64,000 nt of DNA from Octopus sinensis (lineage: Eukaryota). The notes under the pieces were generated by a model. It was not told the origin of the DNA and did no database searches. It saw only the letters and a program-made list of their open reading frames with translations. Position 1 is the stretch's first letter. The number at the start of each line of letters is the position of its first letter. Of this stretch, positions 17,278 through 40,663 are shown in pieces. A program made the position numbers and the translations under genes. Location: contig NC_042997.1 in assembly GCF_006345805.1 (NCBI RefSeq), positions 101,742,001-101,806,000 on the forward strand. The letters are read 5' to 3'.

Positions 17278-18878
17278 TAATTCCTAAACAAAATGTTGCT
17301 GACAGTAACTTCAAAGTTTTGGCCAGCTGAGCCATCATCAGCTGTAACTTTGAAGTTACTGTCAACAACATTCTTATTTAAGAAGATAAATTTGTACTCC
17401 ATAAAAGAATAGAGTAACCCATCAGATTAATGTAAAATTGTCTTTATTATAACTGAACATAAAAACAAACATATATGTGTGTGTATATATATATCATCAT
17501 CGTTTAACATCCGCTTTCCATGATAGCATGGGTTGGACGGTTCAACTGGATGCCCTTCCTAACGCCAACCACTCCGAGAGTGTAGTGGGTGATTTTATGT
17601 GCCACCGACACAGGTGCCAGACGAGGCTGGCAGACGGCCACGCTCGGATGGTGTTTTTTATGTGCCACCGACACAGGTGCCAGACGAGGCTAGTTGACGG
17701 CCACGCTCGGATGGTGTTTTCTTATGTGTCACCGACACAGGTGCCAGACGGGGCTGGCGGACGGCCACGCTCGGATAGTGTTTGTTATGTGCCCTCAGCA
17801 CGGAGGCCAGTCGTTGCGGTACTGGCTACGATCACGTTCGGATGGTTTTCTTATGTGCCACCGGCACTGGTACCACAAGGATACAAATTCCATTGATGTT
17901 CATCTATTTTGATTTGGTTCGATTTGATTTGATTTGATTTGATTCGATTCTCACTTGCCTCAACAGGTCTTCACAAGTGTCACAAGAAGGAAGGTATGCA
18001 CAGGTGGACTGACTACGTCCCAGGTAGGGGCCACGGATTATGGCTTCACTAGTCTTGCCGGGTCTTCTCACGCACAGCATACTTCCATAGGTCTCGGTCT
18101 CTAGTCATTTCCATGGTGAGACCTAACGTCCGAAGGTCGTGCTTCACCACTTCGTCCCAGGTTTTCCTGGGTCTACCTCTTCCACGGGTTCCCTCAACTG
18201 CTAGGGATTGGCACTTTCTCACACACCTATCTTCATCCATTCTCGCCACATGACCATACCAGCGCAATCGTCTCTCTTGCACACAACAACTGATGCTTCT
18301 TAGGTACAACATTTCTCTCAAGGTACTAACGCTCTGTCGAGTAAGTACACTGACATTACACATCCATCGGAGCATACTGGCTTCGTTCCTCACAAGCTTA
18401 CGCATGTCCTCAGCAGTCACGGCCCATGTTTCACTGCCATGTAGCATAGCTGTTCGTACACATGCATCATACAGTCTGCCTTTTACTCTGAGCGAGAGGC
18501 CTTTAGTCACCAGCAGAGGTAAGAGCTCCCTAAACTTTGCCCAGGCTATTCTTATTCTAGCAGTTACACTTTCAGCGCACCCGCCCCCACTACTGACTTG
18601 GTCACCTAGATAGCGGAAGCTATCAACTACTTCTAGTTTTTCCCCCCGGAAAGTGACGGAAGTTGTTTTCTGCAGATTTTCGGAGGTCAATGCTCCAGAG
18701 CATCTGCCACATACAAAAACTATCTTCCCAGTTAGCCTACCTTTGACATTGCTGCACCTCTTATGTGTCCATAGCTTACACTGGGTACATCTTATAGAGT
18801 TTCTACCTACACCTTTTCTACAGATCGAGCAGGGCCATCTTCCTGAGGATATTTGTGGATTTTCTAACTTTCTACTTA

Positions 18879-18913
<35 letters not shown>

Positions 18914-21900
18914 TTTATGATTGTGAGCTGAGCATCCCAACCACAAGTTCACTCCCATATGTATGCATGCACAGACACACAGAGAATGGAATAAAGAAAT
19001 GGAATGGCAATCAGCTGAGATTCCATGAATATCAACAGATATTGATTTAATGCTTATATATGAAGAAATGATCTAGAAAAAGCTTTTTATTTCCAATGGA
19101 AGATGTAGCATATATATAAATTCAATTGTTTCAACTGAGTAAGTAACCATTCCATCACAACAACTTACTCTAGATGAAAAGAGGAATTTAACCCTTTACT
19201 ATTTAAACCGGCCATATCCGGCCAAAATATTTAATCTGTTTTATGCTCAAACTGACCAGATCCAGGCTCTCACACCTACCCTACAATGTTATTCTACATT
19301 AGGTAATTACACCATCAAGATCTTGAAGATATGAGATAATGCATGATTAAATCAAATCAATGTGAATCAATAAGCATTATGTTTGATAGAATAATCAGAA
19401 CACTAAAGGGTTAAGGTGTCTATTTTGGATTTACTTAAATATGTTCATCGAATCAACTTAAATGTTATGTCTCCACTCACTACTTCAAATTATGCTTTAT
19501 TGTTTAACATTCTTCCTGTAGAAAGACTCATGGCTTTGAAGAAACTTAAACTGAAGTTTTAGCAACAGTATTTATTACATGGCCAAAAAGGGGCAGCAGT
19601 CAGCATATCAGACAAAAGGCTTAGTGACATTTCTTTTAGTTTTACATGCTGAGTTTAAATTCTGCCAAGGTCAACCTTGTCATTGATCCTTTTGGGGCCA
19701 ATAAAATAAGTACCAGTCAAGCACTGGGGCCAATGTAATTGACTAGACCCCTCCCCACAAATTTCTGGCCTTGTGTCTACATCAGAAAGAATTATATAGT
19801 CAATTTTTTTTTATTCAGTTATTGTTTTAAACTTCTTAGATCAAAATATGTAAATGGACACAGAAAACAACAAAATAATATACAGCTGGTGACTTCTTTA
19901 TCAAGTCAGATTTTAATATTTTTTCTTTCTATTTTGCTTATTTTCTTTCAATTTATCAGCAAAAGTACTGAGTCGGTTGGTTATACTATGATGAAATACT
20001 TATGTGATCTTATGAAAATTAGGCTGTGTGTTAAGAAGTTTGCTTCCCAGCCACATGGTTTTAGGTTCAGTCTCACTGCATGGCACCTTGGGGCAAGTGT
20101 CTTCTACTCTAGCTTCAAGCCAACCAAAGCTTTGTGAGTGGATTTGGTAGATGAAATCTGAAAGAGGTATGTCATATATATGTACATATCTATGTGTGTG
20201 CCTTTGTGTCTGTGTTTGTCCCTCATTACCAACTGGCAACTGGTGTAGTTATGACCTCATAACTAAGTAGTTGGGCAAAAGAGACTAATAGAATAGATGC
20301 CAGGCTTAAAAATAAAAATAAGTAGTGGAATCGATTTGTTTGACTAAAATCCTTCAAAGCAGTACCCCAGTATGGCCATAGTCTAATGACTGAAATCAGT
20401 AAAAAAATAAAAGAATCATTGCTACCCTAATTTTAAAGGTATTAAATGAAGCAAAAAAAGAAGTTGTTTTGGAGAAAAAATTTATTAAAAACAAACACAC
20501 ACACATGCATGCACACAAACACAACTTGCTTTTAAAAATGGTGAACACTGATTTTATAAAATCATTTTTTATTACCTTGTCTAGCGAAACCCAGATTTTT
20601 TTTCATAGAGCCCACTTTGAGAAATGCTAAACCAAGCAATGAAATCTATTTTTATTTGTAACCAAATTTAATGTTGAAAGCAAATAGTAGAGAAGTCATG
20701 ATAGCCATTTCAAAGACATGCATGCCATTGTTATTACTTTTGTTTTATTGCAACAAAAAATTCCAATATATACATACATCTAGGGCCTGATTACTAGCAC
20801 AATTCCACTGCATATATTAAAGGTCAATAGATACAGTGTAACTATATTAATGACTAGGTCATAAACGTAAAACACTTTTGATTTTATAGTATTATCACAT
20901 AACAAAAGTGGTGATAGTGGCAATAGCATCCAAAGCAGTCAGTGCCCATGGTCTTTTATAGGGCCTTTGAGATTGGTGGGAGACTGAGCCCAAAATGTTT
21001 GCAACAGAGTGGACTTCTGCTAAAGGCACTCAAGGTGGTGGTGTTAAACCAGGTAACAGATTAACTCTACAACTCAAGTGATTGTTCCATAATGTGTTTT
21101 AGTTTCATCATGCAACCTCAAATCAACTAACCTGCCAAATAATAACAACTCTGAAAGAAGGTTGAAAACATTTTCTTAAAACAGAGTGTGCAGATACGCA
21201 AAGTAAACACGAAGTGTGCAGTTGGTTCTCAGCTCTAATATGTCACTTTATTTTCAGATTTTATATATATCTATACCAACACACCCATGCATATAGTTGG
21301 AACATAACTCAACCATAGATGAAAAACATTCGAGTTCGCTAAAGTTAAATTGTGTCACTTGCCAAAAAGCAAAATACTATTTTAGTGTCTGGCTTTGAAG
21401 TTATACCAACTAGCAAATTAAAATGAAATGATAGTAGTCCTATAGTAGTTAGTTTCAAGACTAAGATGTAAATTAGTTGCATCTTTCATCAAGATTCCTT
21501 CCAGAAAAATACTCTGGTAAATTCCAAAAATCACTTTATCAGCTCTTGAAGATAAAGTGCTTCGCAATAAAAAATATAGCTGAAGACAAAGTATCCAAGT
21601 TTCCTTGAAGACAATGTAATTTATACATAATTTATAACTCAGTCATATGAAAGAAACAGTTATAAACTTTATTACCCAATGTTTGCAACAGTTCTATACT
21701 AAAAGAGTCATTAACCTCACTTAAAATGAAACAAAGTACATAAGTTTTAAAATATGATAAATATACACAACATCTAGCTTTGAGAAATAAAAGGAGATTT
21801 AAAATGTTTCATTTTTCATTTGAAATGAGCAGTTAAAGAATATAGCAGCATAGAAATAAGTCATGATGGAAGTATTTTATCATAGGTCATTTCCAAGTTG

Positions 21901-24900
21901 CCATTAGAAAAGCAGTCCTTTGAGATTATTTTATCAGTTCATCTGGCATAGATGACAAGTAATAAACCTAAACTGTCTAATATGAAACTTCATTCTTGTG
22001 AATCACAAAGGCAGAGTAAAATGAATAGTTTTTGACTGTTCTACAAAAGAATGATAAATATACTTCAAAAAGTATTTGGGGGAGGAGCGGAAGTTACTTT
22101 ATACAATTTGTAGTTCACACATAATATTTTTCACATTCAAATGTCACTTCTTTCCAATTACTACATTTAAAGATAGAAATAAAGATTAAAAGAAAAAAAA
22201 TAGCAAAAGAAGACAGCTCAGTTTAGGCAACAGAATAATATTACTGCCAAGATAGAAACAAACTCAAAATTTGTCAATAGTTAATACATATAACATTACG
22301 AGAAAGTTTTCAAAGTTTGCAGTATAATTTTAAAATATGCATTGTTTACAAAACTAAACCAGTGTTGAAAGTATATAACTTAATAGAACACACTAAACAG
22401 TAAGTGCTACTATAATTAGAAATGTTAATGAAAAGATGTTTTAATCCAATAAAACACAAAGATTAAAAAAGGAAAAGCACTTCTTTGATTGATTATTTTA
22501 ATTATAAAAGACAGCATGAATAATATGAATTTAATAAATAATATTTTGAAAATAAATAATTTTATGAACTGTCAGGAACAATTTAGAAGTTCCAGTTAAC
22601 ATGAAATCTTAAAATAAATTTCACTCTGCTCTCAGTGGTCAGTTCTCCTATCACTAAATGTTTCATTGTTAATACAAACTTGCTTTAAAATAATAGTCAC
22701 AATTTAACATTTTGAAGAACATAATGCTGATTACAGAGAGAATGATTTGACTCTAGCATAGGGACTATAAAATCTAAACTTTTTGTCTTCCAACCATGTT
22801 CTATGGCAATAAGGCACCATATCTTTTTGTAACAATTTGTAGATATTTTCTTGCTGGTAATAGTTGGCACTACACATGCCATTAGGAAAACTATAGCATA
22901 AAACTTTGAAATTATACATCCAACTAAAATGAGCATATAAAAATTAAAATTATACTAAAAAGACACGCACAAATTAGCAAAAAGGAGTATTGTTGTTAAA
23001 GTAGATCTAAACATTAACAACAGTCAGATAGTCTAGGGACTAATAACAAGAGGTTTCAAAAGAATGTACTAAAATGAAAAGGAAACTACTGAAATAGATT
23101 CTATAATGCATAATTCACATTAGATTAATCTGGGTTATACTGTATTAATATGGTTATATAAAAAAAAAAGAAAAAAAAGCCAGAACTTCAACATTCAGTT
23201 TATTACAGGAGATGCTATAAATATTAAACTATATTGACAGTTTTTTCTAGTAATCAGTGTTAGTTTACATAATAAGAAACTATTATTATTAGATAAGAAC
23301 AGAATGTCAAGCAATTCTGTATGATGAAGTATAATTAGCAAATAGAACTACCATTAATGTTAGGCAATCAATGTCAGTGAAATTAGGCAGATCTCAACTT
23401 GAGGCTAGATCAGTAACTGAATTAAAGGCATTTTTAAGACAAACTGGAAATAATAAAAAAAAACAAAAAAAACAAAACAATAATGAACATTCACAACAAC
23501 AGTAACAACAACAATAGCAATTATAATAGCATAAAGGGAAAGAAAGTGAGAGGCAGAAAGGAAATACGGTTTTGAACTTATGCAGAGACATTTTAAGGGG
23601 AAAGTTTGCCACAAAATAATATCAAACAGGTGTTGGATTAAGCCAAAGAGAGCAGCAATTCCAACAGATGAAAAAATTTTTTTTTTTACAAATTTGTAGG
23701 CTATTTAGATATAAAGAGATAAAATGTTTAACCTGATGAAATGAAATCTAATATTTACCTCATTAGTTAGGTTTTAACATTTCATGATAACATGAAATTT
23801 AAATATACCTGGAAGTCAATCCAAGGTATCAGTGCTTATAACAACTTAGATCTTCTAATTATCCATTAAGTTTGTTTATATATATATATTTAAAAAGGCA
23901 ACAAATTACAGGAGTTTGTGAAAATCTTTTCTTATAAATCATCAAGTAATAGAACTAGAAAATATTCCATATAAACAATTCATAAAAACTTAATTTCAAG
24001 AGAATAGCAAGGACAGTGAAATAAGATATAAACTTAATCGACTTTAGCAATGACAGCCTAATATTTAATACTGTGATTTCTATTTAGCTACAATCTAATG
24101 GCATTTGAAGTAACTCCAAAGAAAACATTTGGCTCTAGATCATCACCGAGAAAGAATTTAAATTGGCAGATTTAATTACTTGAAATGTAAAGGAATTCAT
24201 GAACATGTCATAGTCAACCAATATTATCAAAGATAATAACTTAAATGACATTCTTAAAATTGTAAGAAAACTAATGTATTAAATAGAACAAGACAAATTC
24301 CCACTTGTAAACTTACATTAAAATGAAAGTTAAAGAAATTGACTCTATTCATAGGTTTTGAACAAGCATACTTAAATGACTATGTTTTATACAACACTGT
24401 TTAAATACTCTATGGGATAATGAAAACTACAAAAAAAAAATTACCCCAAATTTAGTTCTACTCAAGAATGAGTTGTATCCTCAATGGAAAAATTGCACTA
24501 TAACTGTTATTGAATGAAGCATTTAAATTTTTCACAAATATAAATATTGTAATGGGAAAATATGAAAGCTGAAACAATTTTCCATGAATAAAGTAGCTAG
24601 TTAGAAATGATTAGATGAAAAGTAAATAAACATGCCTAGATATAATGCTTTTACTATTGTAGGAATGAGTAGAAAGAATTTGAAACGGAAACTGAATAAC
24701 AGCCATATATAACAAGAAAATAATGGGGAAGAACTTTTTAAAGTATTTAGCCTAGTGAAGTTTAAATCTTAAAAATGTCAACAAGAGTTAAATAAAACAG
24801 TCCAAATTATTGCAAAGATGTTATTGGTATTACATTTAATTAAATTGGAACAATGTAAAGTTTCTGATGGAACTTAGAATATAAACCACGAAAATAAACA

Positions 24901-27900
24901 CAATAATACATTTAAGTAGGCCCTATATTTATTGTTGTATTTGGTTTGCAAGATTCTTTATGTAAATTCTTGTGTTGAAACAAATTTAGTTGTGTCTCGG
25001 GAGAATCATTACACGAATAATAATTTAACTGAGTCACTGAAGAGTCATGAACAGTTATGAAAGGACTTTTAACTAAGAAACAACCAACTGATTGTTTAAC
25101 CAGCACATTAAATAAATGATCGATTAGTTAGTTGGTTAGACATTTAACTAATTAACAATAAAGAAGTGGAATTGAACCTGTGCATATGTTGTTATTATTA
25201 TTGCTGTAATGACTCTCCTAAAACACAAAAAAAGAGGACTCCATCTCATTTTTCTTATTGTACAAACAATATTTACTCTAACAAAGCAAGAAGCCATATT
25301 ATTCTACATTAAAGTACATATTACACAAACAATGATATTTACTTTAACAAAGCAAGAGGCTATTTTTTTTTTTACTATAAAGTACATATTTAATCAATTC
25401 CTTTGAGACACAAAAACCAAAGTCAACAACAGTGAGATTTAAAATCAGAGCAGTGAAATATGTAAGCTGACACTGTAAAGCATCTTTGTCAAGCTCGCTA
25501 CAATCTATGCCATCTCCAAATAAAGTGAATAATAACATGTATATTCTAAATGGAAAAGCATCAGAATCTACAAATTGTAATACATGAAATACAGCACTAT
25601 AAATAGATTTTAATGCCGATTGTATAAAATGAAAAGTTTAGAAACACTCCAACTCCATTAAAATACAGAAAGGATTTGACTACTCTAAGTAAAAAATTTC
25701 AAACAATACTCTTTGCTCAGTAAAACCATGTTTTATATTTCAGCATGAGAATATCTTTTATAAAAATCTACATTGGACAAATAAATTATTCATATGAATG
25801 TTTTCTTCCAAGTCCAGTGTATACACGAAGTCAATCACATCAAATACCCTTCTTCTCTTGGACCTTCCATCAGAGAAATGAAAACTAAGAAATAAAACTA
25901 GCAATCATATTGCTCACACAGACACACACACACACACACACACAAACATGGAACTGAATATATAAAAAAAATTCAAGAAGCTGCTACTATGAAACTGATT
26001 TCCTCTTAACCACTAGAATAGCAAGTAGGCCAATACTGAGACAAAGATGGAATTTTTATTGATAATTTACTCAATGAAATAATTACTTTTTTTTTTTTTT
26101 TTATCTCACTGGTAAAATTTATGTAAACTGCTCAAGTACTATTCCATATTATTCTTAATTTACAATTCATCTGAGATTGAGGTAAATGAAGAACTAAAGA
26201 ATACTGTACAACTGATGAGGCAATGGAGATAAACATGAACTAGTGCATACACCCTAGAAATACCAGCAAAAATTGTAGTTATATTGACAATTAGATCATT
26301 AGAAGTTTATAGAGAACCATGAAACTGTGCCTTTTTTTTTTAAGCATTTAATTCTTGAAATGGTACAAAGTCGACATGGGAGTACTGCAGATGCAGTCTT
26401 GAGAGAGAACAACTCTAAAACCCATATTTTTTTGTCAAACACTTGTCACTTCTTTTAACTTGAGAAGGTTATCTATTATTTTTATGTATCAAAAGTAAAG
26501 TGTAAGCTATGGAATGAAATCTAAGACTATCTGTCGATAATATTATTCTGCTATAGAAGGCATTGTTAAAGTTTTAATAGAACATTATTTTCAAATGAGA
26601 GAAAAAGTGCTCATGCCTGGACTCACAGTGCACAAAGTGCAGTAGCTGACCTACTGCACCATAAATTCTAAAAAAATATATATCAGTAATATCACATTTA
26701 CAAGCCAATTATCATAAATATAATATAAATATTGTGCATATAAATTGTCTATGATTGTGTCCCACAGCCAGTGTTACTGCATAAACTGTAGTTGTTACAT
26801 ATATATTATTCTACAATAGTCTATGTAACAATGTAGGCTTTTGCAGAAAATATATATATATATGGCTTTAGTTATATATAAAAACAAAAGGCAGATACAA
26901 AAATTTAGTTTTTAAAAAGGTGTCAGTAACTTTGAAGTTTTGCACTCCTCATTTTTGAAAGATATAAAGATTACTAGACTTTTTAAATTTAAAATAACAC
27001 AAACACACACGCACTTTAAATGTACTAGAAAAACACTTGAAACTTTTGTCAACACATTGCTGTTTTACTGATTGGAATGTAATTTACCCTTCAACAAAAA
27101 CAAATAAATATTTATTTGTTGCAGATTACATCTGCTGCTGGACATTTTTTATATATCTTCACTCTGAAATACAGGTTGCTACTGTAAATCTGAATTTTGA
27201 AAATTACTGAGAATAAATTGCCATTCATATTAGGTCTTCTAAGCAGCAATTTCAGACAAAAACTGATGAGATTCCAACCATGTATAATCTATTCTCTTTA
27301 CTCAGGTAAGTTACTATAGATGTTTTTTTTTTTAACCTTTCCTTCCCATTTAACTGTACAATATAGCAGGGGCAAATAACATTTCTAACAAGCTTAATTT
27401 AAGAAGAGGAAATAGGAGCCACTTAGTAATAGAATTAGAAACACAGTCACCTGACAAAGGAGAGATATATGGTTTCAATAATGCCTGTTGCCATTTTTTG
27501 TACCTCGAATTGATGCCAATAATATCAGATATCATCTACTTCAAAATCTTAGTAGTTTATAATCTCATCTAGCATTATTACATTTTAGTATCATTGTTTT
27601 TAATGCCTTTAGAGATAATATCATTATGTTTTTAATATGTTTAAGAATGCCACAAACATTACTGTTTTCCATTTCTATATCCTAGCCTTTGGCATTTATA
27701 AGAAATCATTATCCTAAATACATTCTGAATAATTAGAATATTCTGAAACCTCATGAATAATGACAGCAAACTGTAAATCAGGCATCAAAACAAAGGGAAA
27801 GTATGATGTATGTACTTACAACTTATTCCTTAACAAAAACTATTCCAAAACAAATACTGACACACTAACACTCAAATGGGATACAGAGTTTTTTTTTTAT

Positions 27901-30900
27901 TCACAGTTAATTTAGCATATTAACAACAGTTATTAAGCCAAAAGAAAGTAAACAGTCATGGAAGGGTAAATTTTGAAGCTCAGTTTTGCTTTAATAAATG
28001 ATATATAGACAAAGGAAGAAAATAAAGATAACGGCATATCTCTGCGTAACTTCAACACCAGAGAACTAAAAGATATACATGCTAAGGCAAAATAAAGATG
28101 ATTAAACAAGGTTAAAAAAGAAAAGGAAAATAGGGAACATAGTGGTTTGTTTTGATACCTGGAACGAGTCTTGATGTAAACTCTGCATGAAAGAGAGAAA
28201 GCATATATATGACAGAAGACAAGAGTAATCTTTACTTGTCAACAATAATGACATCAATTTTGCAACCTTTGCAGCAGCTTTTGTTCAAGAAAAAAAAAAT
28301 CATTAGATTCTAAGGAATGTTCTCTGCTTCATAAACAACACAACATAACACCTTAATATTTTTCACCATATTTTTGATGGAAACTGCAACCATATCAAAT
28401 CAAGGGTTTGTAAACTGTATTTCGAACATATAAAATGATTCAATAGTCAGATAAAACTAATACCCATTAGCTTCAATTAGAATAAATTGACAAAATCCAA
28501 GAGATCATGTAACTTTAGATGTCAAACCTAATAATTAATATACTTATTATCGATATTGTTATAAACGAGTGGAGAATCTCTACCCTACACAATGCTTTCT
28601 CAATTTTTCTTCTGCAGTCTCTATCTTTAAACTCAGCTGACTCTATTCTTTCCAGAGTTTCAGTCAAGTCAAAGTTTTCCTTTAAGTACTTTGAATAACA
28701 GTACACTCATGTGAGGGAAAAAAAAAGGAAAGCTGGGTGGTGATGAAATTGATTAATTAGAAAGGAGGGAGTTACAAGTGTAGTTGAAAGGAAAACAATT
28801 AGTTAACAGAAAACAGCAAAGAAATTTTATCGGAATATAAATGTATAAATGCGTTACAAATCTAATTAGATGAAAATTATTACAATTGTGATCTCATTTT
28901 TTTTTTTTTAATTTATCATTTTCAATCATTTTATTGCTTTGTCAAAGGAGGAAGGGCAGTATCCATGACTCTTTCCAGGGCTTCTGCGTCAGGTGATTAG
29001 AAGGGAGAATGTTTATCCTCAGACTAGAGATCTAACTCAAATGCTTGTAACAAAGTGAAAATAACTAAATGCACTCAATAACTACCAGATGGTGATGTTA
29101 AACTGGGCAACAGGTTAAGTCTATACCCCAAGATAGGAATAGTCCATCCATCCATTATGCTTCCACATAGGATCAGTCTACCAAATCTCACTCACAAGTC
29201 TTTGATTAACCCAAGGTTCAGATAGCAGTGTCTTGCCCAAGATGTACAATGGTGTCAAGCCAAAACCCAGTGTGGCAAAAGTGAACTCATTAAACAAGGT
29301 GCCATGCTGACATCTATATTTTAGAAGTGAATGCATAGACTGAAGAACTCATCACAACTTGAAGTCAAGTTAATGCCAAAAGTTTCTTAACACTAGCATT
29401 TAAACCAACCATATCTGGCCCAAATATTCTCCTTGTTTTACATTCAGATCAGTCAGATCCTATCTCTCACACTTATGCTACAATGTCCTTCTAAAAATAT
29501 ACAATCATATCCTCAAAATCTTGAAGCTACAAGCATTACATTTAACAAAATAATCTGAATGCTAAAGGGTTAGATGTACTTTAGTAGTAAAATATATCCG
29601 AGAAATCTGAATATATTTTCTAAAGCATAACAAATATTTCCTTTCTATTACATACAAATTTTACTGTTTCACAACTGTTATTCTATGCTAACAAGAATAT
29701 GAACTGAGGTAGTTTTTTTTTCTCCTTTAGTATAAGATGTTAATAAAAGGAATGATAATGTACAATATTGGCTATAAATAAAAACTGACAACAAATGTGA
29801 CAAGCTGCATAATTTAGCTGTACAGGATTAGATCATCAATATTAGATATAATTGTTATAAGCTTGTTATTTATAACAGAACAGAGTCTTTTCGAAAAAGT
29901 TTGAAAAAAACCCATATAAAATGTATTTTCACAAAGTAAACAGCAAGCAATAAAATTGCTTTTAAAATTTATTTTTGTGGTTGTTTTTTCACTGATCATT
30001 TGAGGTTTAATAAAAATCCCTAGTAGTACTCAAATAAATAAATAAAAACAAAATTTATTTTTAAAGATGTAAAGAATGCAACCAGAATCAAGTGATGTCT
30101 TGAAAAAGCTGGGTATAAATGTCAATAAGGAGGAAAAAAACCAAATAAACGATGGAGGTACATAAACCTGAACTTTTCTCTTATTGGTTACATTTTATGT
30201 CCTGTTTCAGCTTTATCAAATAATACTGAATTACTTTACAAACCCTTAGTTCTTTTTATTTTTCTCCAGCTCTTCCTTAATTGTAAACTTTTCTATTCAG
30301 AACAGTTTCAAATACATCTAAAATATTCATGAAGGAGGAATATAGTGGCAAATGTAGGAGGAATAGAAGATTATACAGATCACTTAAAACTGGAGGGAGG
30401 GAGGGGGGGAAGAGAGAGAGAGAGGGCACAATAGTAAAGCTAAAGTTAATATGGTAGGATGCAGTCTGGATTTGGTGTAGGTAAGAGCTAGTAACACTAG
30501 ACTTTACTTTGCATTCGTAGAAGGTAGCTCTTACACAAATAAAAGTGGGTACTGAAAAGTTCCTGGCTTTAAGGGTATCGCAAAAGGCCTGGTTGGAGGC
30601 CCAACCTTCTGAGTTCTTTTACAGGGTTTAGAAAAACTGGAAGACTGCTGCAGTAAGTGTGTGAATCTGAGAGGGGAATATTAAAATAATTAACTGATCC
30701 TCCTGTATTTTCTTTTACCCAAAGCCAGGAACTTTTCAGCACCCCTTGAGAGAGAGAGAGAGAGAGAGAGATCTCAAAACTCCTCTGAGTAATGAATGCA
30801 AATTTTTGAAATGCTTTGCAGAAAACTGTTGACTATCCAATGACCAACTAAATTTTTTAAAATAGCAGATACAAAATTCCCTTGACCTAACCAATAAGTG

Positions 30901-31771
30901 AATTTTCAAAGAATGCAGGTACACATGACAATTCATTTCTTTGAATTCAGAATTTTAAGAGTAGTAGGAAAATAGGATACAAAAAAAAAAAAGGAAGTAA
31001 TTGAGAAACAAAAGAGGCAAAAATCCAATTTCTCTCACAATTCCTTTTAAGCATACATACAGCAATTGGCAAACAAATGGAGACAGCATAGTGTAAAGAG
31101 GACTCTTTGGTTTTCCCAATGAAAGACTACCTCTCTTATGATTGTACCACAATTAAATTTAGTCAGTACACTGTAAAGTAGCTGAACAGCATCCAGCCTT
31201 AGAAACCATATCAAAGTTGAAGGTGTGAAACATGGTGATTGGTCCTGCTTCAGGGACATGTATTTTACTTCATCCTAGGTTACTTCAACTCTCTCAGAAC
31301 ACTCCCCAGATCTTGCATTCATTCTACACTGATGCTGTCAATGCAGAAATCCAATTTTATCTAAACCTCAACTCTCTATATGAACTAATTTCATCCATCA
31401 CACACATCCCAACTGACACGAAGACTCCAAACATCATTGATCTCTTTCTCCCCACCAAACCCAGCTTCTACTAGATGAACATCTCTGCATCTATCAGGCC
31501 ATCCACTCATTGCTTCATCACCTATTCTCACCATCTTACACTGATTGACATGGTAGTGTGGACACAGAATTTGCTTTGTTAAAAGGTGGTCTCGGGTTGT
31601 ATCTTACTGCATGGCACGGTGGGCAAGACTCTTCTACTCTGTAGATTCAGACCAACAAATACTTTCAGTGAAATTTGTAGATGGAATATATATATATATA
31701 TATATAGATATATACAGTAGGACCTCGAATTTCGAACACTTTTGCTCATGAATAAATTGTGCTTTATATAT

Positions 31772-31831
<60 letters not shown>

Positions 31832-32373
31832 TATGTAAAAAGCACTTCTTAATGGTGATCAGTGGCGTTCATAAACTGAGGTACTACTGTATTAAATGAA
31901 TATGAGAAAGACGGAGATAAAGCACGATTTAAACATGATCAGAGGTATTTGAAAACTGAGGCACACACCCACACACACGTCAAGGTCACCAGCACAAATC
32001 CATACACGTATACACACGCACCTTCATTTTGGGATCATTACTACTTTATTATCTCCCCTTCTTCCCAGCTCTCCTGACTGACCACCTCTGTCCGGCAGTT
32101 GCCATGATAGATTGCAAGCCACAAAACAGTTTTTAATTTCCTCCCTCTGTATATTTCTATCTTCTTTTCTGTTGAAGAGTGTAGACTCAAAACGTAAAAG
32201 ACTTTCTTACTTCCCGAGTGTTAAACTAATACATTTGTTTGTTGTTTATATACCTGACTTCATCAATTGTTTTTTCATAAATTCTCACTATGTATATATA
32301 TATATATACACACACACACAGTGCCTCAGCTTTCGGACCACTGATATATATATACATATATATATATACACAC

Positions 32374-32428
<55 letters not shown>

Positions 32429-32720
32429 CACACATATATATATACATATATATATATACACACATATATATATACATATATATATATACACACACATATA
32501 TATACATACACAAATATATATATACATACACACACATATATATATACACACATATATATATACATACACACACATATATATATACACACGTATATATATA
32601 CATACACACACATATATATACACACGTATATATATACATACACACATATATATATATACACACGTATATATACATACACACACACACATATATATATACA
32701 TACACACACACATATATATA

Positions 32721-32759
<39 letters not shown>

Positions 32760-33452
32760 CACATATATATTCATAGATGCATACATACATATATATATTC
32801 ATAGATGCATACATACATATATATATTCATAGATCCACACATATATATATATATACAGATATATATACATGCATATATATATACATATATACAAACACAC
32901 ACACATACATATATATATACATATATACAAACACACACACATACATATATACAAACACACACACATACATATATACAAACACACACACATACATATATAC
33001 AAACACACACACATACATATATACAAACACACACACATACATATATATATATATATGTTCATACATACCAAATCCAAAAACGAAATATATATATATATAT
33101 ATAATATATATATATATTTGTTTTGTTTTTTTTTTCGTTTTTCTTGTTTCAGCTCAGAGCTGTGGCAATGCTGATGCACCGCCGTTTTGTGCTAAGAGAC
33201 TCCTCTAATATGTGGCACTTGGTGAAGAATGGAGTTTGATATAGCTACCCTCATTTGCACCTCTTGCCGTGAGGTAGGTTTATCTGGGGCTCTCGACAGG
33301 AAGATGTCCAGCTTTGATTTAAAAACTGTTACATCTACTTTGTGCAAGTTCTTCAGACTCTTTGGGAGAATATTAAAAAGCTGTGGGCCCTTGAAACCCA
33401 GGCTGTTGCAGTAGCTGGTCCTTAAGTGTGATGGCACTGCTGGGATCTTTGG

Positions 33453-33503
<51 letters not shown>

Positions 33504-33504
33504 C

Positions 33505-33539
<35 letters not shown>

Positions 33540-35564
33540 CATATGCATACAAATATATATACATACATATATTTATATACATATATATACATACATTTAT
33601 ATACATATAATTATATACAAACATATATCTACATATATATCTACATATATATATATATACATACAATATCTATATATATATATATATACATATATATACA
33701 AATATATATATACATATATATGCATATATACAGATATATACATACAAATATCTATATATATATATATATACATATAAATATATTAAATATATATATATAT
33801 ACATACAAATATCTATATATATATATATACATATAAATATATTAAATATATATATATATATACAAATATAAAGTAAATAAATGGTACAACAAGGCACCGA
33901 TATTTACTGGAAAATAGCAATCGTAATAAATACGACGCTATTGTATAGCTTCACTGTGTATATACTAGCAAAGACGCGAGTGTGCAACAAACATGAAAAA
34001 AATTTGTCTTACCTCTAGGAAGAACATCTGATAAATGGACAACCTAGAATTGGATGATGCATGACCGTTTTCTGACTCTTCAAATACGTTTGACAACGTA
34101 AATTTGATTAGTCTTCATCAGCTGCATTTACCTAGACAAAAGTGATAGGGTAGGGTTGGGATGGGATGGATAGGGAAGGTGGGGTTGGACTGTGTGGGTG
34201 TGGGGTTACAAGGGAGGGGTGACGAAGGGAGAGGGGGAGGGAGAAGGTGGATAGGAGTAAACAGAAGAGAAGTTGGTAGGAGAGTCCAGTTTGCTGGACA
34301 TTGTTGTAGAGCTGAAAAAGAAGTAATTTCTACTCTTCTCCTCTGGAAGCCATCTACTCGCAATACCAGAGGGCGCACACTCTCCTACCCTGATGTAATC
34401 TCCAGGGATACAGGCATCCAGCAACAGGACCTCCGTAATGCTATGATGGACCGTGAAGTCTGGCGTAACATAGTAAATTCCATTGTCTCGACCACGGTCG
34501 AACAATGATGATGATGATGATAGAGCAAGAGAGGAGAGGTGGGTGAGAGGAAGTAGGTGTGAGAGGAAGAGAGAAGAGGGGAGGAGAGTTGAGCCCATGT
34601 GGCGCAAAGGAGCGAAGAGAGAAGATTAATCCCTGTTCATGGCACAAACAGGAGTCCAGATAGCCCATGTGCAAGGACAATCTGAATACATACAGGTGTT
34701 GCAAAGAGTGACCAGAAGAGTGGAAATGGCATGAAACTGGGGTGTCATTGCTGAGTCGGATGTCTCAGTGGTATTCCATAAACCGGTCAGCCATGCAGCA
34801 TCCTGTTTGCCCAATGTATAGAGAAGAGCAGGAGATGCAGATGACATTGGTAGAAGTGCAGGCGAAGGAGTCGGTGATATGATAGGGTCAATGATGGGTG
34901 CTGGTGAGGATGGTGTTGGAGAGGTAAGGGCAAGTGTGGCAGCATGGGTGGGAGCAGGGGAATGAGCCGGGTTGTGAGGTTGGGTTAGTGAAGAGGATGT
35001 GGAGCAAGACGTTTCGTAGAATGTGGCTAACCTTTCATAATATCACTTTCATAATATCTGACCCCTCCACTTCATACATCTTCCCACCTCTCGGTGGGAA
35101 GATGTATGAAGTGGAGGGGTCAGACTGGAGTCACCAGAAGGCCCAGAGAATGGTGCATTGGAGAGGTAGGGTGGTAGTTGAGGGGAAAGGGGAGACTGGA
35201 GACAGTGGGTCAGGTCCAGGGGAAGAGAGCAAATGTGCAGTTCATGGAACATGCTCTGGCAAGAGTAGTGTGGATAGTGGTGAAGGGATATCCATGTAGC
35301 AAGAGGTGGAAAGCCATGACTTGAAACTGAGTCTCAAAGTCATAGTTGTCACTGCAGAGCCTGCATCGACAGAGGAATTGGGAGGATTCTCTACCTAGAC
35401 TTTCTACTCTTGAACACTTCAGCTGCACCTCACTGCCCACCATGGATTACAATGGACTTCTCTGTTGATGATAAACCGCTACATACATACATACATATAT
35501 TTGAATATATATATATATATATATACATACATACACACACACATACATATATACATACATGTGC

Positions 35565-35597
<33 letters not shown>

Positions 35598-35971
35598 TAC
35601 ATATATATATACATACATGTGCATATATACACATATAAGCATATATGTATATATACATTTATCATCATCATCATTTAGCGTCCGTTTTCCATGCTAGCAT
35701 GGGTTGGACGGTTCAACTGGGGTGGCATCAGGCCCAGTCTGATCTGGCAGTGTTTCTACGGCTGGATGCCCTTCCTAACGCCAACAACTCCGCGAGTGTA
35801 GTGGGTGCTTTTTACGTGCCACCCACACAGGTGCCAGACGGTGCTGGCAAACGGCCACGAATGGATGGTGCTTTTACGTGCCACCGGCACGGAGGCCAGT
35901 TGGGGCGGCACTGGCAACGGCCACGAACATGTATATATATATACACATATGTGCATATATACACACATATA

Positions 35972-36018
<47 letters not shown>

Positions 36019-36108
36019 GCATATATGTATATACATACATATACATATCTATATATATATACATATGTATATATACATAAGTATATATACATATATAGAT
36101 ATACAATC

Positions 36109-36149
<41 letters not shown>

Positions 36150-36350
36150 TAGACACACACACACACACACATATATATATACACATATCTGTTCATATAT
36201 GTTTATACATACATATATATATATACAGACACACACATATATATATATATAGACACACACATATATACACACATATATAGATATATATATACAGACACAC
36301 ACATATATACACACATATATATATATAAATATACATATACCTATATGGAG

Positions 36351-36389
<39 letters not shown>

Positions 36390-36444
36390 AATACATATAT
36401 ATGTATATATACACATATTTATACATACACACACATATATATAT

Positions 36445-36477
<33 letters not shown>

Positions 36478-38829
36478 CATATACATATATATACACATAC
36501 ATATACACACATATGTATATAAAGTGGTTTATTTATGTATATGAAAGGGAATTTATTCATGTTTCTACCATATGACCACTGTTGTTTCAGCAAAGTTTTT
36601 GTTTGCTAAGTGTCATCAGAGATAGCATGTTTCACGGAAATGATGGCAGCCATGTTGTAAGAATATAAATACACAGGTGAAGGCATGTCTCCACCTATTA
36701 AGAAGCTCACTTTGCAACCATGTAGTTTCAAGTTCAGTTCCACTGTGCAGCCAACCAATGCATTGTGGGCGAATTTTGTAGATGGAGACTGTGTGGAAAC
36801 CTATCGTGTGTGTGTGTGTCTTGTCCTCCCACTGCTTGACAACTGGTGGTGGTCCTTGTCGCTTAACAGTTTGGTAAAAGAGACCCATAGAATAAGTACC
36901 AGATTTATTTTATCAGTTCTGGGTGTTGATTTATCTGACTAAACCCTTTAAGTTAGTGCTCCAGCATGGCAACAGTCCAATGACTGAAACAAGTTAAAAG
37001 ATAACCCCATTTATATAAAACTCAATGTTCAACATGGATTTCCTTCATAATTGTGGGTTAATTTAAAAACAAAGGAATATTACTTAGGGTTGTAGATAAT
37101 ATTCATTCACGTAAAAGTTTCCTTCATAATTGGGTTAACATGACCCCCAGATTGGAATCTTCCATATGTGTCTGTCAAGATTTGAGCTCATATATTCAAT
37201 TAGGACTGCCCCAGCTTGGCCACAGTATGAAGACTGCCACCAATATAAGAATACTAATCTAGAATTAATCTACTTTTAAATCTCGTAACAAACCTCTAAC
37301 TGCAAAACAATGTTAACAATGGATACAAACATAATGGGTTTTACAAATATGATTGCTACTTAATGTAGAATGTTGGCACTTCTGAAGAACCATTATAAAA
37401 ATATTCTAAGAAAACCAAGACAGCTGGTGTTAATGTAGGACAGGAAGAGTGATGAATCTAGTGTGTAGAAAATGGTGGGAAGAGTTTATAAAGGTTTTTC
37501 TTTTAGTTTTAATAAGAGGGCTAGTGCCCATGATCTGCAATGGCCCTCCCAGTCTGGTGAGATTGATGCAGTAGGTGTTTGGTTTACTTCAAGTTGATGA
37601 GGTTAGATCGTCAGTAGGTAGCATAATAGATGTGTCTTGAATGAGTGTTATAATTGTAATGTTGACATGGTTGTTGTAATATGAAGAGAATTTTTTTTTT
37701 ACAGCACAACTGCAAAGCTGCTTCAAAGGTATGTTAGCCTAACTATTGGAGTCATTGAATAATATTTAAATAGATACATAAAAAATGAATATACTAATAT
37801 TTACAGAGGTCATAGTAAAAGAACTTGAAAGGGGAGTGAGAGTTTTTAATATATTAATAAGACTACTATGTGGTTATGAAGAAAGATGGATAAAAGGTTA
37901 TGATGCAAAAATCTATCTCTAATGAGAAATGTGCTTTTAACATTGATTAGAATCTAAAGTTGAATGTCTAAAGGCAAGGAGAATAATCATGAATAGGAGA
38001 TAGACATGGAAGCTGTAATAAGCTACTATGTTAAACTTCCACACAATACAAGTACTAAGATGAACAGAGAATTTGGTACAATGGAAAAAGAAAAAAAGGT
38101 AAATTAAGAAGCAGGTAATATTAAATTCCTTAAGAAGGAAAGGTAATATTAAATATTAATTATCAAATAATGTAGAGGGTTTACGATAATTTAACAGGAA
38201 ATATAGTGTGATCTATTAGATAAGCAATATTAAAAACTTTTAATAAAGACTAATTTGTTTTAGTAAACACTAGGTGATAACAAATTTATATATGAAAGTT
38301 AAAGTTAAATAATCTAACCTTTGAACAAATACATTTTAAATTATTGCAGTAACATATTTGAAATTAATAGGCTAATTTTAAAATACTGGTCATTATTTAA
38401 AATTAAATATTAACTCTTAACTGAGCGAAAATAACTGCAACAAAATGCTACAACAAAGTCATTACTATAAAGATAGCTATGTCGCTGTGACATCATCGCT
38501 ATCAATATAGTAATGTCTTTAAAACAAACAACAACTGTTACATCTCTAAACAACAACTGGTTTCAACAATAATTGCTTGAAAACACATCATTTAAAAACA
38601 AAGGAATATTACTTAGGGTTGTAGATAATATTCATTTACGTAAAAGTTTCAAGACACCAAAGTAAAAAAATATTGAAATAAAAGAATTACATCACACTAT
38701 AATAATTGAACACTCATGTGTAAAAGAAGACAACTTCAGCTGTTACAAGAAATTCTATGACATTTTAATCTGAACTACTTTTAAATAAACACATCACAAA
38801 ATTTCTTATACAAAAGCATAAAAAGAATT

Positions 38830-38861
<32 letters not shown>

Positions 38862-40663
38862 TGCTTGAAATAAACAAATATCACCAGAATAAACTAACAG
38901 AATGTTTAATAAAAAAGAATCACAAGAGGAATAAGCAGGATAACAACTATGCTGGAAAACAAACAAACAAGTAGAAAATAGCAAATTTGGACAAAATTTA
39001 GTATCACTAAAAGGAAACCTAAAAGAAAGCAGACAAAAGAACTTTATTGATACACTATAACCAATAAAAACAAAAATTAAGCTCTTTATAATGAGATAAA
39101 CCACGAATTTAATGCATTTCAGTGCAATTTGTATTATAAGGGTATGGTTAGAAATATAGCATGAGACCTTGTAAATGTTGCGCAATAAAGAGCCTTTTTT
39201 TGTAAGCAATATATGGCCAATAGATTAGGATATTGTACAACTCTACTGAAAATTACAACTTCATCTATTATATCTAATGTCAGTTGGTTGGAGCCTATCT
39301 TTTCTCATCTAATATTTGCAAGAGAAGTTTAATTTAATACTGAAAGATTAGCGGATATTTGTATATTTACAGATAGGGGATTAAAAAAATTTGAATTCAA
39401 AACAAATGTAATGAGAAAAATATTAATTGATGACTAATGTTTTTTTTCCTAGTAAATAAAGGAGACAACTCAAGATATGTTTCTGCTTTCATCAACATTC
39501 CTTATCAAGGTTCTGCCTCTTCATAACCTGCAGTTATTTAGTAGTGAACAAATCACTAAGTAAATATAGAGAAATCAAAATTTGTATGATAAAATAGTAT
39601 TGAATGCCTGAGAATAATGTTAACAGTATCAGGTTACTCCTTACTGTACCATACTTATTTAGATAGAGATGAACTAAGTTAGCTTGAAGCCAATTGTCAA
39701 TGCAGCAGCAGCATTGACAAAATATGAACTATTAACCATTGAATTAATAATCAAATATGAAATATCTATAGTTGTTGATTAATAAAATATGATTTAATTG
39801 ATATATAGATTTTATGAAGAAGGTTCATATACAGAAAACGATTAGTAAGATTTAGTAATAGGTAGATTTGTGAGAACCACAAGATTATTGTAACGCTAAT
39901 AATTATATGAGAAAATGAACATTGTTTCATTAGCTTTTCGAGAAAATAGAAAGAGCATTTTTAAGTACACAATTACAAATATAATAATCCAAATAAATAC
40001 TAGTTCTTTACTTATCCCTCTAAAATTCAGTAGTTATAAGTTCTCAATGTGTAGTGGTATAGCAAAGGTTCCCAGAGTCTAGGGGCAAAGTTTGTTTTGG
40101 TGCCACTGCCTTAATTAGCAAACCTAATAGAGGAAATTTTCTGCCTCTTCACACAGAACCTGGGATTGACCGCCCCTTTCTCTCCTTACTACACATCTGC
40201 TATGTGGGGACTCAGTTATTCAAAACAATGCATATATTTAATGGATATATAAGATGTTTTTTTAATGCTTCATAACTGAGACAGAAATTTTTAGCTAATG
40301 GCTTTCATGTTTTTATATATATATATGATGGCCATCCACTCATGACCGAGGAAGACCATTGTTGTCCTTCAAGAACACTGAGTGCTCTAGGACTATTTTA
40401 TTTTGCATTTGTGGCTCCGTTGGTGGCTAATGAGTCCTGCTCGACAAGCTAACATGTCTGCAAACATTGCAAACCAAGCTTTCCCCATTCACTACACCAG
40501 CGGTGCACTTTCGAGAAGCACGCTTAAGTTCTTCATGCAGAATACATGAACTCTCAAAGGTGTTGACCCCCTCCTTAACCTGCTTCCTCCATCTGTGGCG
40601 ATGACAGGCATTACTCTCCCATTCACTCTCCTGCATATCACAGGCCCTTAATGAGGAATAGAT

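What the first reader, a model, noticed from the sequence alone, without database searches (positions are those of the whole stretch)
28159..28182. Candidate 24-nt frame-preserving microexon in the middle of the giant DOP1 intron
Seen: the minus strand reads ...ctcttgtcttctgtcatatatatgctttctctctttcatgcag|AGTTTACATCAAGACTCGTTCCAG|gtatca. It is exactly 24 nt, phase 2-2 like the flanking exons, and stop-free, changing DEFR-AQLQ to [20 protein letters not shown] sits about 20 nt before the AG. Established: neural microexons in bilaterians are 3n long, lie in long introns, carry an upstream UGC, depend on the eMIC domain of Srrm2/3/4 proteins, and are enriched in vesicle-trafficking genes. DOP1 acts in endosome/Golgi traffic. 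Inference: a neural-specific DOP1 isoform in a cephalopod, with the insert in a variable loop between conserved helices.
Basis: partly seen in the sequence, partly recalled or inferred. Interest (0 to 1): 0.75.

Follow-up and report, generated by a model that had tools for sequence, protein, structure and literature searches.

The report
Real, conserved DOP1 coding microexon
The 24-base stretch is a genuine, deeply conserved tiny exon of the membrane-traffic gene DOP1 in an octopod, and a public Argonauta gene model already contains it, but nobody has yet tested whether it is brain-specific.

Summary
In detail: minus strand 28182-28159 is a 24-nt, AG/GT-flanked, phase-2, stop-free element that turns DEFR-AQLQ into [16 protein letters not shown]. 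The motif alone is not beyond chance: shuffled introns give an equally good best candidate about 65% of the time. Comparative evidence settles it. (1) A 2,472-aa Argonauta hians DOP1 model (GAB1600861.1) contains exactly ...[16 protein letters not shown].... (2) In the A. hians genome the 24-mer is 24/24 identical. It sits in a roughly 400-nt intronic island at 84-92% identity, against 72% at third codon positions of neighbouring exons, and this is the best-conserved block of the intron. (3) Elysia marginata has a 24-nt, same-phase element mid-intron encoding EYLRTRS (chance about 1.6e-4), and an E. crispata model splices it to the next exon. (4) A spliced mRNA from another lophotrochozoan includes a 24-nt orthologue (VFLRQQS). 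(5) Isoform pairs in a sea spider, prawns, an ostracod and plankton transcripts differ by 15-21 nt at this junction. So this is a real coding microexon, probably an ancient protostome cassette exon. Neural specificity and eMIC dependence remain untested, although the cis-features fit. The known vertebrate DOP1A microexon lies elsewhere in the protein.

The parts
28159..28182 (-). 24-nt coding microexon (A GTT TAC ATC AAG ACT CGT TCC AG; phase 2 in, phase 2 out). It encodes (R)VYIKTRS(R).
   Evidence: Searches give the sequence and frame. It is 24/24 nt identical in A. hians at L014 55444-55467. It is present in A. hians protein GAB1600861.1 at residues 2256-2263. Orthologues exist in Elysia and in the mRNA L012/P0076.
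28183..28229 (-). 3' splice-site region: AG at 28184-28183, UGC at 28187-28185 and 28203-28201, a UCUC-rich polypyrimidine tract, and a 45-nt AG-exclusion zone.
   Evidence: measure the features (rank 4 of 7,456 AG sites). The region is 92% identical to A. hians over -50..-1, with the last 24 nt identical. The motif set comes from PMC8797185.
28153..28158 (-). 5' splice site GTATCA, preceded by exonic CAG.
   Evidence: It is identical in A. hians, and Elysia marginata has CAG|GTATGC. The orthologous donor is used in forward splicing in L012 and in a back-splice in L008.
27893..28291 (-). Conserved intronic island around the microexon (about 110 nt upstream and 265 nt downstream), presumed to hold splicing-regulatory sequence.
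   Evidence: It is the best blastn block of the whole intron between the two octopods: 590 nt, 80.7% identity, 476 bits. Per-bin identity is 84-92%, against 72% at third codon positions of six neighbouring exons. No Rfam family reaches threshold. The region is single-copy within the window.
46628..46683 (-). Upstream DOP1 exon ([18 protein letters not shown] + AG), which donates to the microexon.
   Evidence: It maps to P0076 and P0096.
14467..14631 (-). Downstream DOP1 exon (A + [54 protein letters not shown] + CT), the acceptor for the microexon.
   Evidence: It is 98% identical to A. hians.
14632..46627 (-). The 31,996-nt host intron, which the microexon splits into 18.4-kb and 13.5-kb introns.
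   Evidence: The mid-intron layout is the same in A. hians (19.3-kb intron) and in E. marginata (8.2 kb).

Best explanation
Window 28182-28159 (minus strand) is a genuine protein-coding microexon of the DOP1 (dopey) gene of an octopod. The spliceosome joins exon 46683-46628 to it and joins it to exon 14631-14467. This adds eight residues (junction R, then VYIKTRS, then junction R) to a flexible, length-variable linker between two helices of the DOP1 C-terminal domain. It is an old exon. It is identical in Argonauta, recognisable as [VE][YF][IL][KR]x[RQ]S-R in Elysia sea slugs and in another lophotrochozoan, and matched in position and phase by 15-21-nt alternative microexons in arthropods. Shown: the exon exists, is under coding and flanking constraint, and is included in spliced mRNA or gene models of relatives. 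Inferred: in octopods it is a regulated cassette exon, included in some cells and skipped in others. This inference rests on the roughly 400-nt conserved intronic island, and recognition would use the UGC/UCUC-rich 3' splice-site region. The most likely regulator, by analogy with other bilaterian microexons, is the neuronal Srrm2/3/4 eMIC pathway, but that step is not tested.
For:: A. hians DOP1 (GAB1600861.1, 2,472 aa) reads ...[29 protein letters not shown].... The window is a different octopod, since its last exon is only 79% identical; the 24-mer is 24/24 identical in the A. hians genome, mid-intron; the microexon sits in the strongest conserved block of the intron (590 nt, 476 bits). Flanks are 84-92% identical, against 71.7% at third codon positions of six DOP1 exons; the A. 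hians models combine RNA-seq and Octopus protein homology with ab initio prediction, and a 24-nt exon inside a 19-kb intron cannot be an ab initio product. E. marginata has ...ttcAG|C GAG TAT CTC AGG ACA CGG AGC AG|GTATGC, 4.3 kb after the upstream exon and 3.9 kb before the downstream exon. Differences from the octopod are mostly synonymous or conservative; only 22 AG-N24-GT elements exist in that intron. This one scores 23 against VYIKTRS and the next best scores 3. Only 1 of 136,550 native 7-mers reaches 23, so about 1.6e-4 are expected by chance; the E. crispata model KAK3801676.1 starts MLPKCSEYLRTRSR|TQIQRIAAL; mRNA contig L012 (P0076) reads GAA TTC AA|T GTG TTT CTA AGA CAA CAA AGC AG|A GTA CAG... 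and continues to the DOP1 stop; the same donor is used in an exact back-splice in L008; inclusion/skipping pairs at the same junction in Pycnogonum, Macrobrachium, Palaemon, Notodromas and two plankton taxa; the insert lies at the start of a pLDDT<50 stretch between helices with pLDDT about 80 and about 75, and it splits the Pfam DOP1_C match.
Against: I could reach no RNA data from the window's own species, so inclusion there is inferred from sequence identity with A. hians. No skipped isoform was seen in any cephalopod or mollusc, so the exon could be constitutive in these animals. The A. hians model might owe the exon to homology transfer rather than to its own RNA-seq. The microexon was not detectable in two other mollusc-type genomes whose complete orthologous introns I scanned (Candidula; the ERZ25073280 species), so conservation is patchy. 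Homology between the molluscan 24-nt exon and the arthropod 15-21-nt exons rests on position and phase, not on sequence similarity. The motif-only statistics are weak, and the unbiased all-against-all intron comparison was not significant.
Confidence: 0.85

Rival explanations
1. Neural-specific, eMIC (Srrm2/3/4)-dependent microexon. This is the first reader's full reading: the exon is included essentially only in neurons because the eMIC domain recruits early spliceosome components to the UGC-containing 3' splice-site region.
For: Two UGC motifs lie within 21 nt of the AG, with a UCUC-rich tract and a 45-nt AG-exclusion zone. This composite ranks 4th of 7,456 AG sites and matches the cis code described in PMC8797185. 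The region is 100% conserved over the last 24 nt in A. hians. Elysia has a UGC/UCUC tract and an AG-exclusion zone of about 120 nt. The exon's size (24 nt), frame preservation, long host intron and strong flank conservation are typical of this class. DOP1 is a trafficking gene, and vertebrate DOP1A independently has a developmentally regulated neural microexon.
Against: Nothing here measures tissue specificity or regulator dependence. The feature thresholds were examined after the candidate was known. The 3' splice site is strong by PWM (11.6 bits), whereas fly eMIC exons have very weak 3' splice sites. The tissues of origin of the transcripts that include the orthologous exon are unknown.
Confidence: 0.5
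2. Constitutive mini-exon: in octopods, and perhaps in molluscs generally, the 24-nt exon is always included, and DEFR-AQLQ mRNAs do not exist.
For: Every mollusc-side sequence that spans the site and was spliced includes it: the A. hians model, the E. crispata model, and the L012 and L008 transcripts. No skipped cephalopod or mollusc transcript was found. The 3' splice site is strong.
Against: Constitutive exons rarely carry about 400 nt of flanking intronic conservation above the synonymous rate. The positionally equivalent exon is demonstrably alternative in several arthropods and plankton taxa. The Candidula annotated protein lacks any insert. The A. hians protein is labelled 'isoform X3', which hints at several isoforms in the reference it was named after.
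Confidence: 0.2
3. Chance pseudo-exon: an AG...GT string that happens to be open and 3n long, is never spliced, and lies inside a conserved non-coding element such as an enhancer or a hosted small RNA.
For: Shuffled introns yield an equally good best candidate 64.5% of the time. The all-against-all intron comparison gave similar raw scores for low-complexity pairs.
Against: The exact peptide is in an annotated A. hians protein. Orthologous 24-mers with a codon-wise substitution pattern exist in Elysia (chance about 1.6e-4) and inside a spliced mRNA. No Rfam family matches.
Confidence: 0.02
4. Recursive-splicing (ratchet) exon that helps remove the giant intron stepwise and is not retained in mature mRNA.
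For: It lies mid-way in a very long intron, and the same mid-intron position holds in three species.
Against: A recursive site needs a 5' splice site regenerated at the junction (AG|GTRAGT). Here the exon starts AG|AGTTTA, so joining the upstream exon gives ...CAG|AGTT with no GT. The exon is retained in mature products, and it evolves codon-wise.
Confidence: 0.01

Closest known systems
Bilaterian neural microexons dependent on the eMIC domain of Srrm2/3/4 (Irimia 2014; Torres-Mendez 2019, from own knowledge; PMC8797185, read)
   Same: The size (24 nt, within 3-27), frame preservation and long host intron match. So do the strongly conserved intronic flanks, the UGC close to the 3' splice site with a UCUC-rich tract and an AG-exclusion zone, insertion into a surface or linker region, and a host gene in vesicle trafficking.
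   Different: Neural enrichment and eMIC dependence are untested here. The 3' splice site is strong by PWM rather than weak.
Vertebrate DOP1A microexon (30 nt, PTRSMRV[IL]CQ; zebrafish exon 13; PSI rises from 0.47 to 0.89 between 12 and 72 hpf; Calhoun et al., eLife 2025, PMC12626420, and bioRxiv 10.1101/2024.08.19.608697 Table S1)
   Same: It is in the same gene family, and it is also a frame-preserving, developmentally regulated microexon with nearby UGC.
   Different: It lies at a different position, between ...ELVDFLLDIVSL and ETYIEIQTEH... in the N-terminal half, not in the DOP1_C linker. The length and sequence differ, so it is not orthologous. Vertebrate and amphioxus proteins show no insert at the junction studied here.
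Annotated DOP1 isoform pairs in arthropods: Pycnogonum litorale CAM1295860/61, Macrobrachium rosenbergii X1/X2/X5/X6 vs X3/X4, Palaemon carinicauda X1 vs X2, Notodromas monacha CAG0914054/55
   Same: The exon-exon junction is the same (...[DE][DEQ]F | x-[AS]HLKRLS...), and so is the phase (the junction codon changes and the insert ends in AG). The inserts are microexon-sized and rich in K/R/S, and they are alternative.
   Different: They are 15 or 21 nt rather than 24 nt (RSSNS, KKGAS/KKGGS, KLTGAKS) and have no clear sequence similarity to VYIKTRS. Homology is positional only, and I could not inspect their genomic exon structure.
Recursive-splice-site exons of long introns
   Same: It is a small exon-like element in the middle of a very long intron.
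   Different: No 5' splice site is regenerated at its 5' end, and the exon is retained and translated.

Membership tests
Frame-preserving cassette microexon | Length of at most 27 nt (strict) or 51 nt, and a multiple of 3 | tested here: met
   It is 24 nt. The length is the same in A. hians, E. marginata and L012.
Frame-preserving cassette microexon | Canonical AG and GT splice sites, used by the spliceosome | tested here: met
   AG|...|GTAT in the window, A. hians and Elysia. The orthologous sites are used in mRNA L012 and the donor is used in back-splice L008. Use in the window's own species is inferred.
Frame-preserving cassette microexon | Present in mature mRNA or protein | tested here: met
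   The A. hians protein GAB1600861.1 has VYIKTRSR. P0076/L012 runs through to the stop codon. There are no RNA data for the window's species itself.
Frame-preserving cassette microexon | Also skipped (alternative) | tested here: inconclusive
   Skipping is shown for the positional counterpart in arthropods and plankton taxa. No skipped cephalopod or mollusc transcript was available. Flank conservation suggests regulation.
Frame-preserving cassette microexon | Conserved exon with conserved flanking intron | tested here: met
   The exon is 24/24 identical. Flanks are 84-92% identical against a 72% synonymous yardstick, and this is the best block of the intron.
eMIC/Srrm2-3-4-dependent neural microexon programme | Inclusion enriched in neural tissue | not testable with these tools
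   No tissue-resolved cephalopod RNA data could be reached.
eMIC/Srrm2-3-4-dependent neural microexon programme | Inclusion depends on the eMIC domain | not testable with these tools
   This requires knock-down or knock-out, or ectopic expression.
eMIC/Srrm2-3-4-dependent neural microexon programme | UGC motif close to the 3' splice site, UCUC-rich polypyrimidine tract, long AG-exclusion zone | tested here: met
   UGC at -5..-3 and -21..-19, four UCUC/CUCU, Py fraction 0.77 and a 45-nt AG-exclusion zone. The composite ranks 4th of 7,456 sites, and the region is conserved in A. hians. In E. marginata the UGC/UCUC tract lies at about -60..-30, with an AG-exclusion zone of about 120 nt.
eMIC/Srrm2-3-4-dependent neural microexon programme | Weak 3' splice site (fly eMIC exons) | tested here: not met
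   My crude PWM gives 11.6 bits, at least as strong as the flanking constitutive exons at 10.0 and 6.7. The PWM is generic and not trained on cephalopods.
Orthologue of the vertebrate DOP1A 30-nt microexon | Same exon junction in the protein | tested here: not met
   The vertebrate exon lies between ELVDFLLDIVSL and ETYIEIQTEH (exon 13). The present exon is at residue 2256 of 2472, inside DOP1_C.
Recursive-splicing exon | 3' splice site immediately followed by GT, so that a 5' splice site is regenerated | tested here: not met
   The exon starts AGTTTA.

The most novel reading that the evidence does not exclude
The exon is the molluscan form of a single ancient protostome microexon at the DOP1_C linker. 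On this reading it has been alternatively spliced since before the lophotrochozoan-ecdysozoan split, it is neuron-enriched and eMIC-dependent, and it tunes DOP1's role in endosome-Golgi traffic (DOP1-MON2-flippase complex) by adding a short basic Ser/Thr-containing patch. That would make it one of the very few individual microexons shared across protostome superphyla. It would also be a second, independent microexon in the DOP1 family besides the vertebrate N-terminal one.
Probability: 0.3. Interest if true: 0.6.

Novelty: new member of a known kind. Interest (0 to 1): 0.45.

Why it matters
Microexon programmes are well mapped in vertebrates and flies but hardly at all in cephalopods, whose large brains evolved independently. 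Here is a concrete, validated-by-conservation microexon in an octopod trafficking gene, with a defined regulatory island of about 400 nt that could be tested directly. It also appears to have positional counterparts that are alternatively spliced in chelicerates and crustaceans. Individual microexons are rarely shared between distant phyla, so this one could serve as a marker for how old the programme is in protostomes. At the same time the exon is already present, without comment, in public gene models (A. hians, E. crispata, RefSeq crustacean isoforms). It is therefore not a new gene feature so much as an undescribed one. I found no paper on it: the literature searches turned up only the vertebrate DOP1A microexon.

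Tried and rejected
1. Motif-only significance. PWM ranking plus shuffles showed the string is no better than the best chance candidate of such an intron, so I did not rely on it.

2. I first rejected the P0009/L008 lead, because the contig continues after 'VFLRQQSR' into an upstream DOP1 exon in another frame. That rejection was wrong in its conclusion. P0076/L012 shows VFLRQQS is the true orthologous microexon, and L008 is a back-splice at its donor.

3. The unbiased all-against-all comparison of every in-frame AG...GT element of the octopod and Elysia introns was dominated by long low-complexity pairs and was not significant. I replaced it with the targeted test, which suits a pre-specified candidate.

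4. The first two homologous-protein searches returned no cephalopod or full-length DOP1 proteins. These appeared only in the exhaustive representative search.

5. The E. crispata contig was not retrievable.

6. Plakobranchus (L010) has more than 10 kb of intron upstream of the exon and was not informative.

7. The complete introns of Candidula and the ERZ25073280 species show no orthologue.

8. I considered a recursive-splice-site reading and a small-RNA-host reading and rejected both.

9. The eLife supplement files held as text did not give the vertebrate exon's position. The bioRxiv Table S1 did.

10. A Pfam scan of the large intronic ORF gave only sub-threshold zinc-finger matches, so I do not name that element.
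Full report
**Observation.**
The sequence is as described. On the minus strand, 28182-28159 reads AGTTTACATCAAGACTCGTTCCAG. It is preceded by ...atatgctttctctctttcatgcAG and followed by GTatca. Spliced between exon 46683-46628 (...GAT GAA TTC AG) and exon 14631-14467 (A GCT CAA CTA CAG...), it keeps the frame. DEF-R-AQLQ becomes [16 protein letters not shown].

**Is the motif alone beyond chance? No.**
- A generic splice PWM finds 855 in-frame, stop-free AG...GT candidates of 3-51 nt in the intron. This one ranks second. Its sites (11.6 and 4.5 bits) are as good as those of the real flanking exons.
- In 200 block-wise dinucleotide shuffles, the best candidate was at least as good in 64.5% of cases. 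Both sites were individually matched in 16.5%.
- I then scored four 3' splice-site features that PMC8797185 describes for eMIC-dependent exons: AG-exclusion zone, UGC near the AG, pyrimidine content and UCUC content. On this composite the site ranks 4th of 7,456 AG dinucleotides on both strands of the window.
- It is also the only top site with an in-frame, stop-free 5' splice-site partner. The expected count is about 0.05 per intron of this size. This is suggestive, but the features were examined after the fact.
- The region is single-copy within the window.

**Gene identity.**
The window carries the last dozen or so exons of DOP1 on the minus strand, from about 63,998 to the stop near 12,758. 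I mapped them with P0076 and P0096. Homologues carry Pfam DOP1_C.

**Decisive evidence 1: a sister octopod.**
- The exhaustive representative search returned P0096. This is GAB1600861.1, 'protein dopey-1-like isoform X3 [Argonauta hians]', 2,472 aa.
- It reads ...[50 protein letters not shown]....
- The window is not A. hians. Its exons are 92-98% identical at the protein level, and the last exon is only 79% identical.
- In the A. hians genome (L014) the 24-mer is identical at 24 of 24 bases. It again lies in the middle of the orthologous intron, which is 19.3 kb there.
- Aligning the two introns, the strongest block by far is 590 nt centred on the microexon (80.7% identity, 476 bits). The flanking coding exons score 91 and 236 bits. 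The remaining hits are dispersed repeats or weak matches.
- Identity by bin is 88% (-100..-51), 92% (-50..-1), 100% (exon), 84% (+1..+50, including one 6-nt indel), 78% (+51..+100), 88% (+101..+200) and 84% (+201..+270). It falls to 55-62% further upstream.
- The neutral yardstick is the third codon positions of six neighbouring DOP1 exons, which are 71.7% identical.
- The exon therefore sits in a constrained island of about 400 nt. No Rfam family explains this island.
- The A. hians models were built with GINGER from ab initio, RNA-seq and Octopus-protein homology evidence (PMC12682272). A 24-nt exon inside a 19-kb intron can only come from the latter two.

**Decisive evidence 2: other lophotrochozoans.**
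- In Elysia marginata (L011) the upstream exon ([18 protein letters not shown]) ends at 2485 and the conserved downstream exon starts at 10703.
- At 6807-6830 lies ...ttcAG|C GAG TAT CTC AGG ACA CGG AGC AG|GTATGC. It is 24 nt, in the same phase, and encodes EYLRTRS.
- Compared with the octopod, four codons differ synonymously (TAC/TAT, ACT/ACA, CGT/CGG, TCC/AGC). Two differ conservatively (I/L, K/R). One differs radically (V/E).
- That intron has only 22 AG-N24-GT elements. This one scores 23 (BLOSUM62) against VYIKTRS and the next best scores 3.
- Among 136,550 native 7-mers from all six frames of three foreign loci, only this element reaches 23. The expectation is about 1.6e-4.
- The E. crispata model KAK3801676.1 begins MLPKCSEYLRTRSR|TQIQRIAAL. 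The annotator therefore spliced this exon's donor to the conserved exon.
- A transcript contig from another lophotrochozoan (L012/P0076, 61% identical to A. hians) reads GAA TTC AA|T GTG TTT CTA AGA CAA CAA AGC AG|A GTA CAG GTA CAA CGG... and continues to the DOP1 stop codon. It is a mature mRNA that includes a 24-nt orthologue, VFLRQQS.
- I had wrongly dismissed the same peptide in P0009/L008. In that contig the microexon's last base is joined to the exact first base of an upstream exon (A. hians genomic ...ctttctAG|GAAGCTAAT). This is a back-splice that uses the microexon donor.

**Negative results.**
The complete orthologous introns of the land snail Candidula (13.8 kb, best score 8) show no recognisable orthologue. 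Neither does that of the unidentified ERZ25073280 species (10.8 kb, best score 5). Conservation is therefore patchy. These two introns also serve as negative controls for the Elysia match.

**Evidence for alternative use at this junction.**
- Within single 90% clusters, or within single species, isoform pairs differ by a microexon-sized insert exactly here.
  - Pycnogonum: DDF-S-AHLK vs DDF-RSSNS-S-AHLK.
  - Macrobrachium and Palaemon: EQF-S-SHLK vs EQF-SKKG[AG]-S-SHLK.
  - Notodromas: EEF-N-SHLK vs EEF-KKLTGAK-S-SHLK.
- In two plankton taxa the pairs are P0012 vs P0072 and P0271 vs P0269. At the DNA level, L009 and L013 differ by T GAT CCT AGG AAA GCT AAC AG (21 nt) between ...TGG AG and T TCA CAT.
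- All of these are consistent with a phase-2 exon ending in AG.
- Amphioxus isoforms do not vary at this junction, and vertebrate proteins have a different linker.

**Protein context.**
- The linker between ...EQELS.D..F and WL.LYL..CKLLD varies in length and sequence across animals.
- An AlphaFold2 model of P0076 (mean pLDDT 63) places the insert (residues 445-453) at the start of a stretch with pLDDT below 50 (residues 450-477). This stretch lies between helix 412-438 (pLDDT about 80) and helix 479-497 (about 75).
- Pfam's DOP1_C match breaks at residue 443.
- No solved structure covers the region.

**Comparison with known cases.**
- Vertebrate DOP1A has a conserved, developmentally regulated 30-nt microexon, PTRSMRV[IL]CQ. 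It lies between ELVDFLLDIVSL and ETYIEIQTEH in exon 13, not at this junction, so it is not orthologous.
- The present exon fits the class of bilaterian microexons in size, frame, flank conservation and 3' splice-site motifs. Its neural specificity and eMIC dependence are untested.
- A recursive-splice reading fails because the exon starts AG|AG and is retained.

**Verdict.**
My confidence is about 0.85 for the exon together with its being regulated, and higher for the exon alone.
- The neural/eMIC interpretation is plausible (about 0.5) but unproven.
- The exon is already present, unremarked, in a public A. hians gene model. The novelty is therefore that of an undescribed member of a known class.
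- There is an interesting but unproven possibility that it is an ancient protostome-wide alternative microexon.

Noticed in passing
L008 nt 849/850 (ENA ERZ27229306 k141_50366); the acceptor corresponds to L014 31460: A transcript contig joins the last base of the orthologous microexon (...AGCAG|) to the exact first base of a DOP1 exon about 530 codons upstream (GAAGCT...). In A. hians that base is preceded by ...ctttctAG. This looks like a back-splice junction, that is, a DOP1 circular RNA ending at the microexon. A chimeric assembly cannot be excluded.
   Followed up: partly
Proteins P0099/P0240, P0111/P0244/P0245/P0251, P0145/P0253, P0012/P0072, P0271/P0269 (no window coordinates): Annotated or transcript-derived isoform pairs in a sea spider, prawns, an ostracod and two plankton taxa differ by 15- or 21-nt inserts at the same DOP1_C junction and phase as the octopod exon. 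The inserts are rich in K/R/S. This may be one ancient protostome microexon. Their genomic structure was not inspected.
   Followed up: partly
window 42505-42899, 23495-23772 and 23226-23383 (minus strand): Three further blocks of the same intron align collinearly with the A. hians intron (L014 47458-47834, 61898-62165 and 62792-62961) at 67-74% identity over 170-400 nt. They are weaker than the microexon island and of unknown nature.
   Followed up: no
window 35567-35801 and 17434-17575: A short element matches six or more places in the A. hians intron at 62-81% identity. It is a dispersed (SINE-like) repeat shared by both octopods.
   Followed up: no
window 18049-18912 (minus strand); related fragments at about 9133-9273 and 10326-10567: A 287-aa ORF lies inside the intron. 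Its only Pfam matches are sub-threshold PHD/C1 zinc-finger hits. Similar peptide fragments recur elsewhere in the window, so it is probably part of a repeated mobile element. It was not identified.
   Followed up: partly
window about 32100-33900 and 35400-36600: There are long tracts of imperfect TA/CA-type microsatellite, read as [10 protein letters not shown] in every frame of the ORF list. They make up several kb of the intron.
   Followed up: no
L001 10788-10877: About 500 nt downstream of the conserved DOP1 exon in the ERZ25073280 species there is a weak second match to that exon (KLHRVLAVSEH..NRVNARN..YWLHLYLSACKL, E about 6e-4). It may be a degenerate partial exon duplicate or a chance match.
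   Followed up: no
L015 (Candidula unifasciata) 46005-59777; merged L016+L001 about 11340-22155: The complete orthologous introns of a land snail and of an unidentified mollusc-like species contain no recognisable 24-nt orthologue. The exon has therefore been lost, or has diverged beyond recognition, in some lineages.
   Followed up: yes
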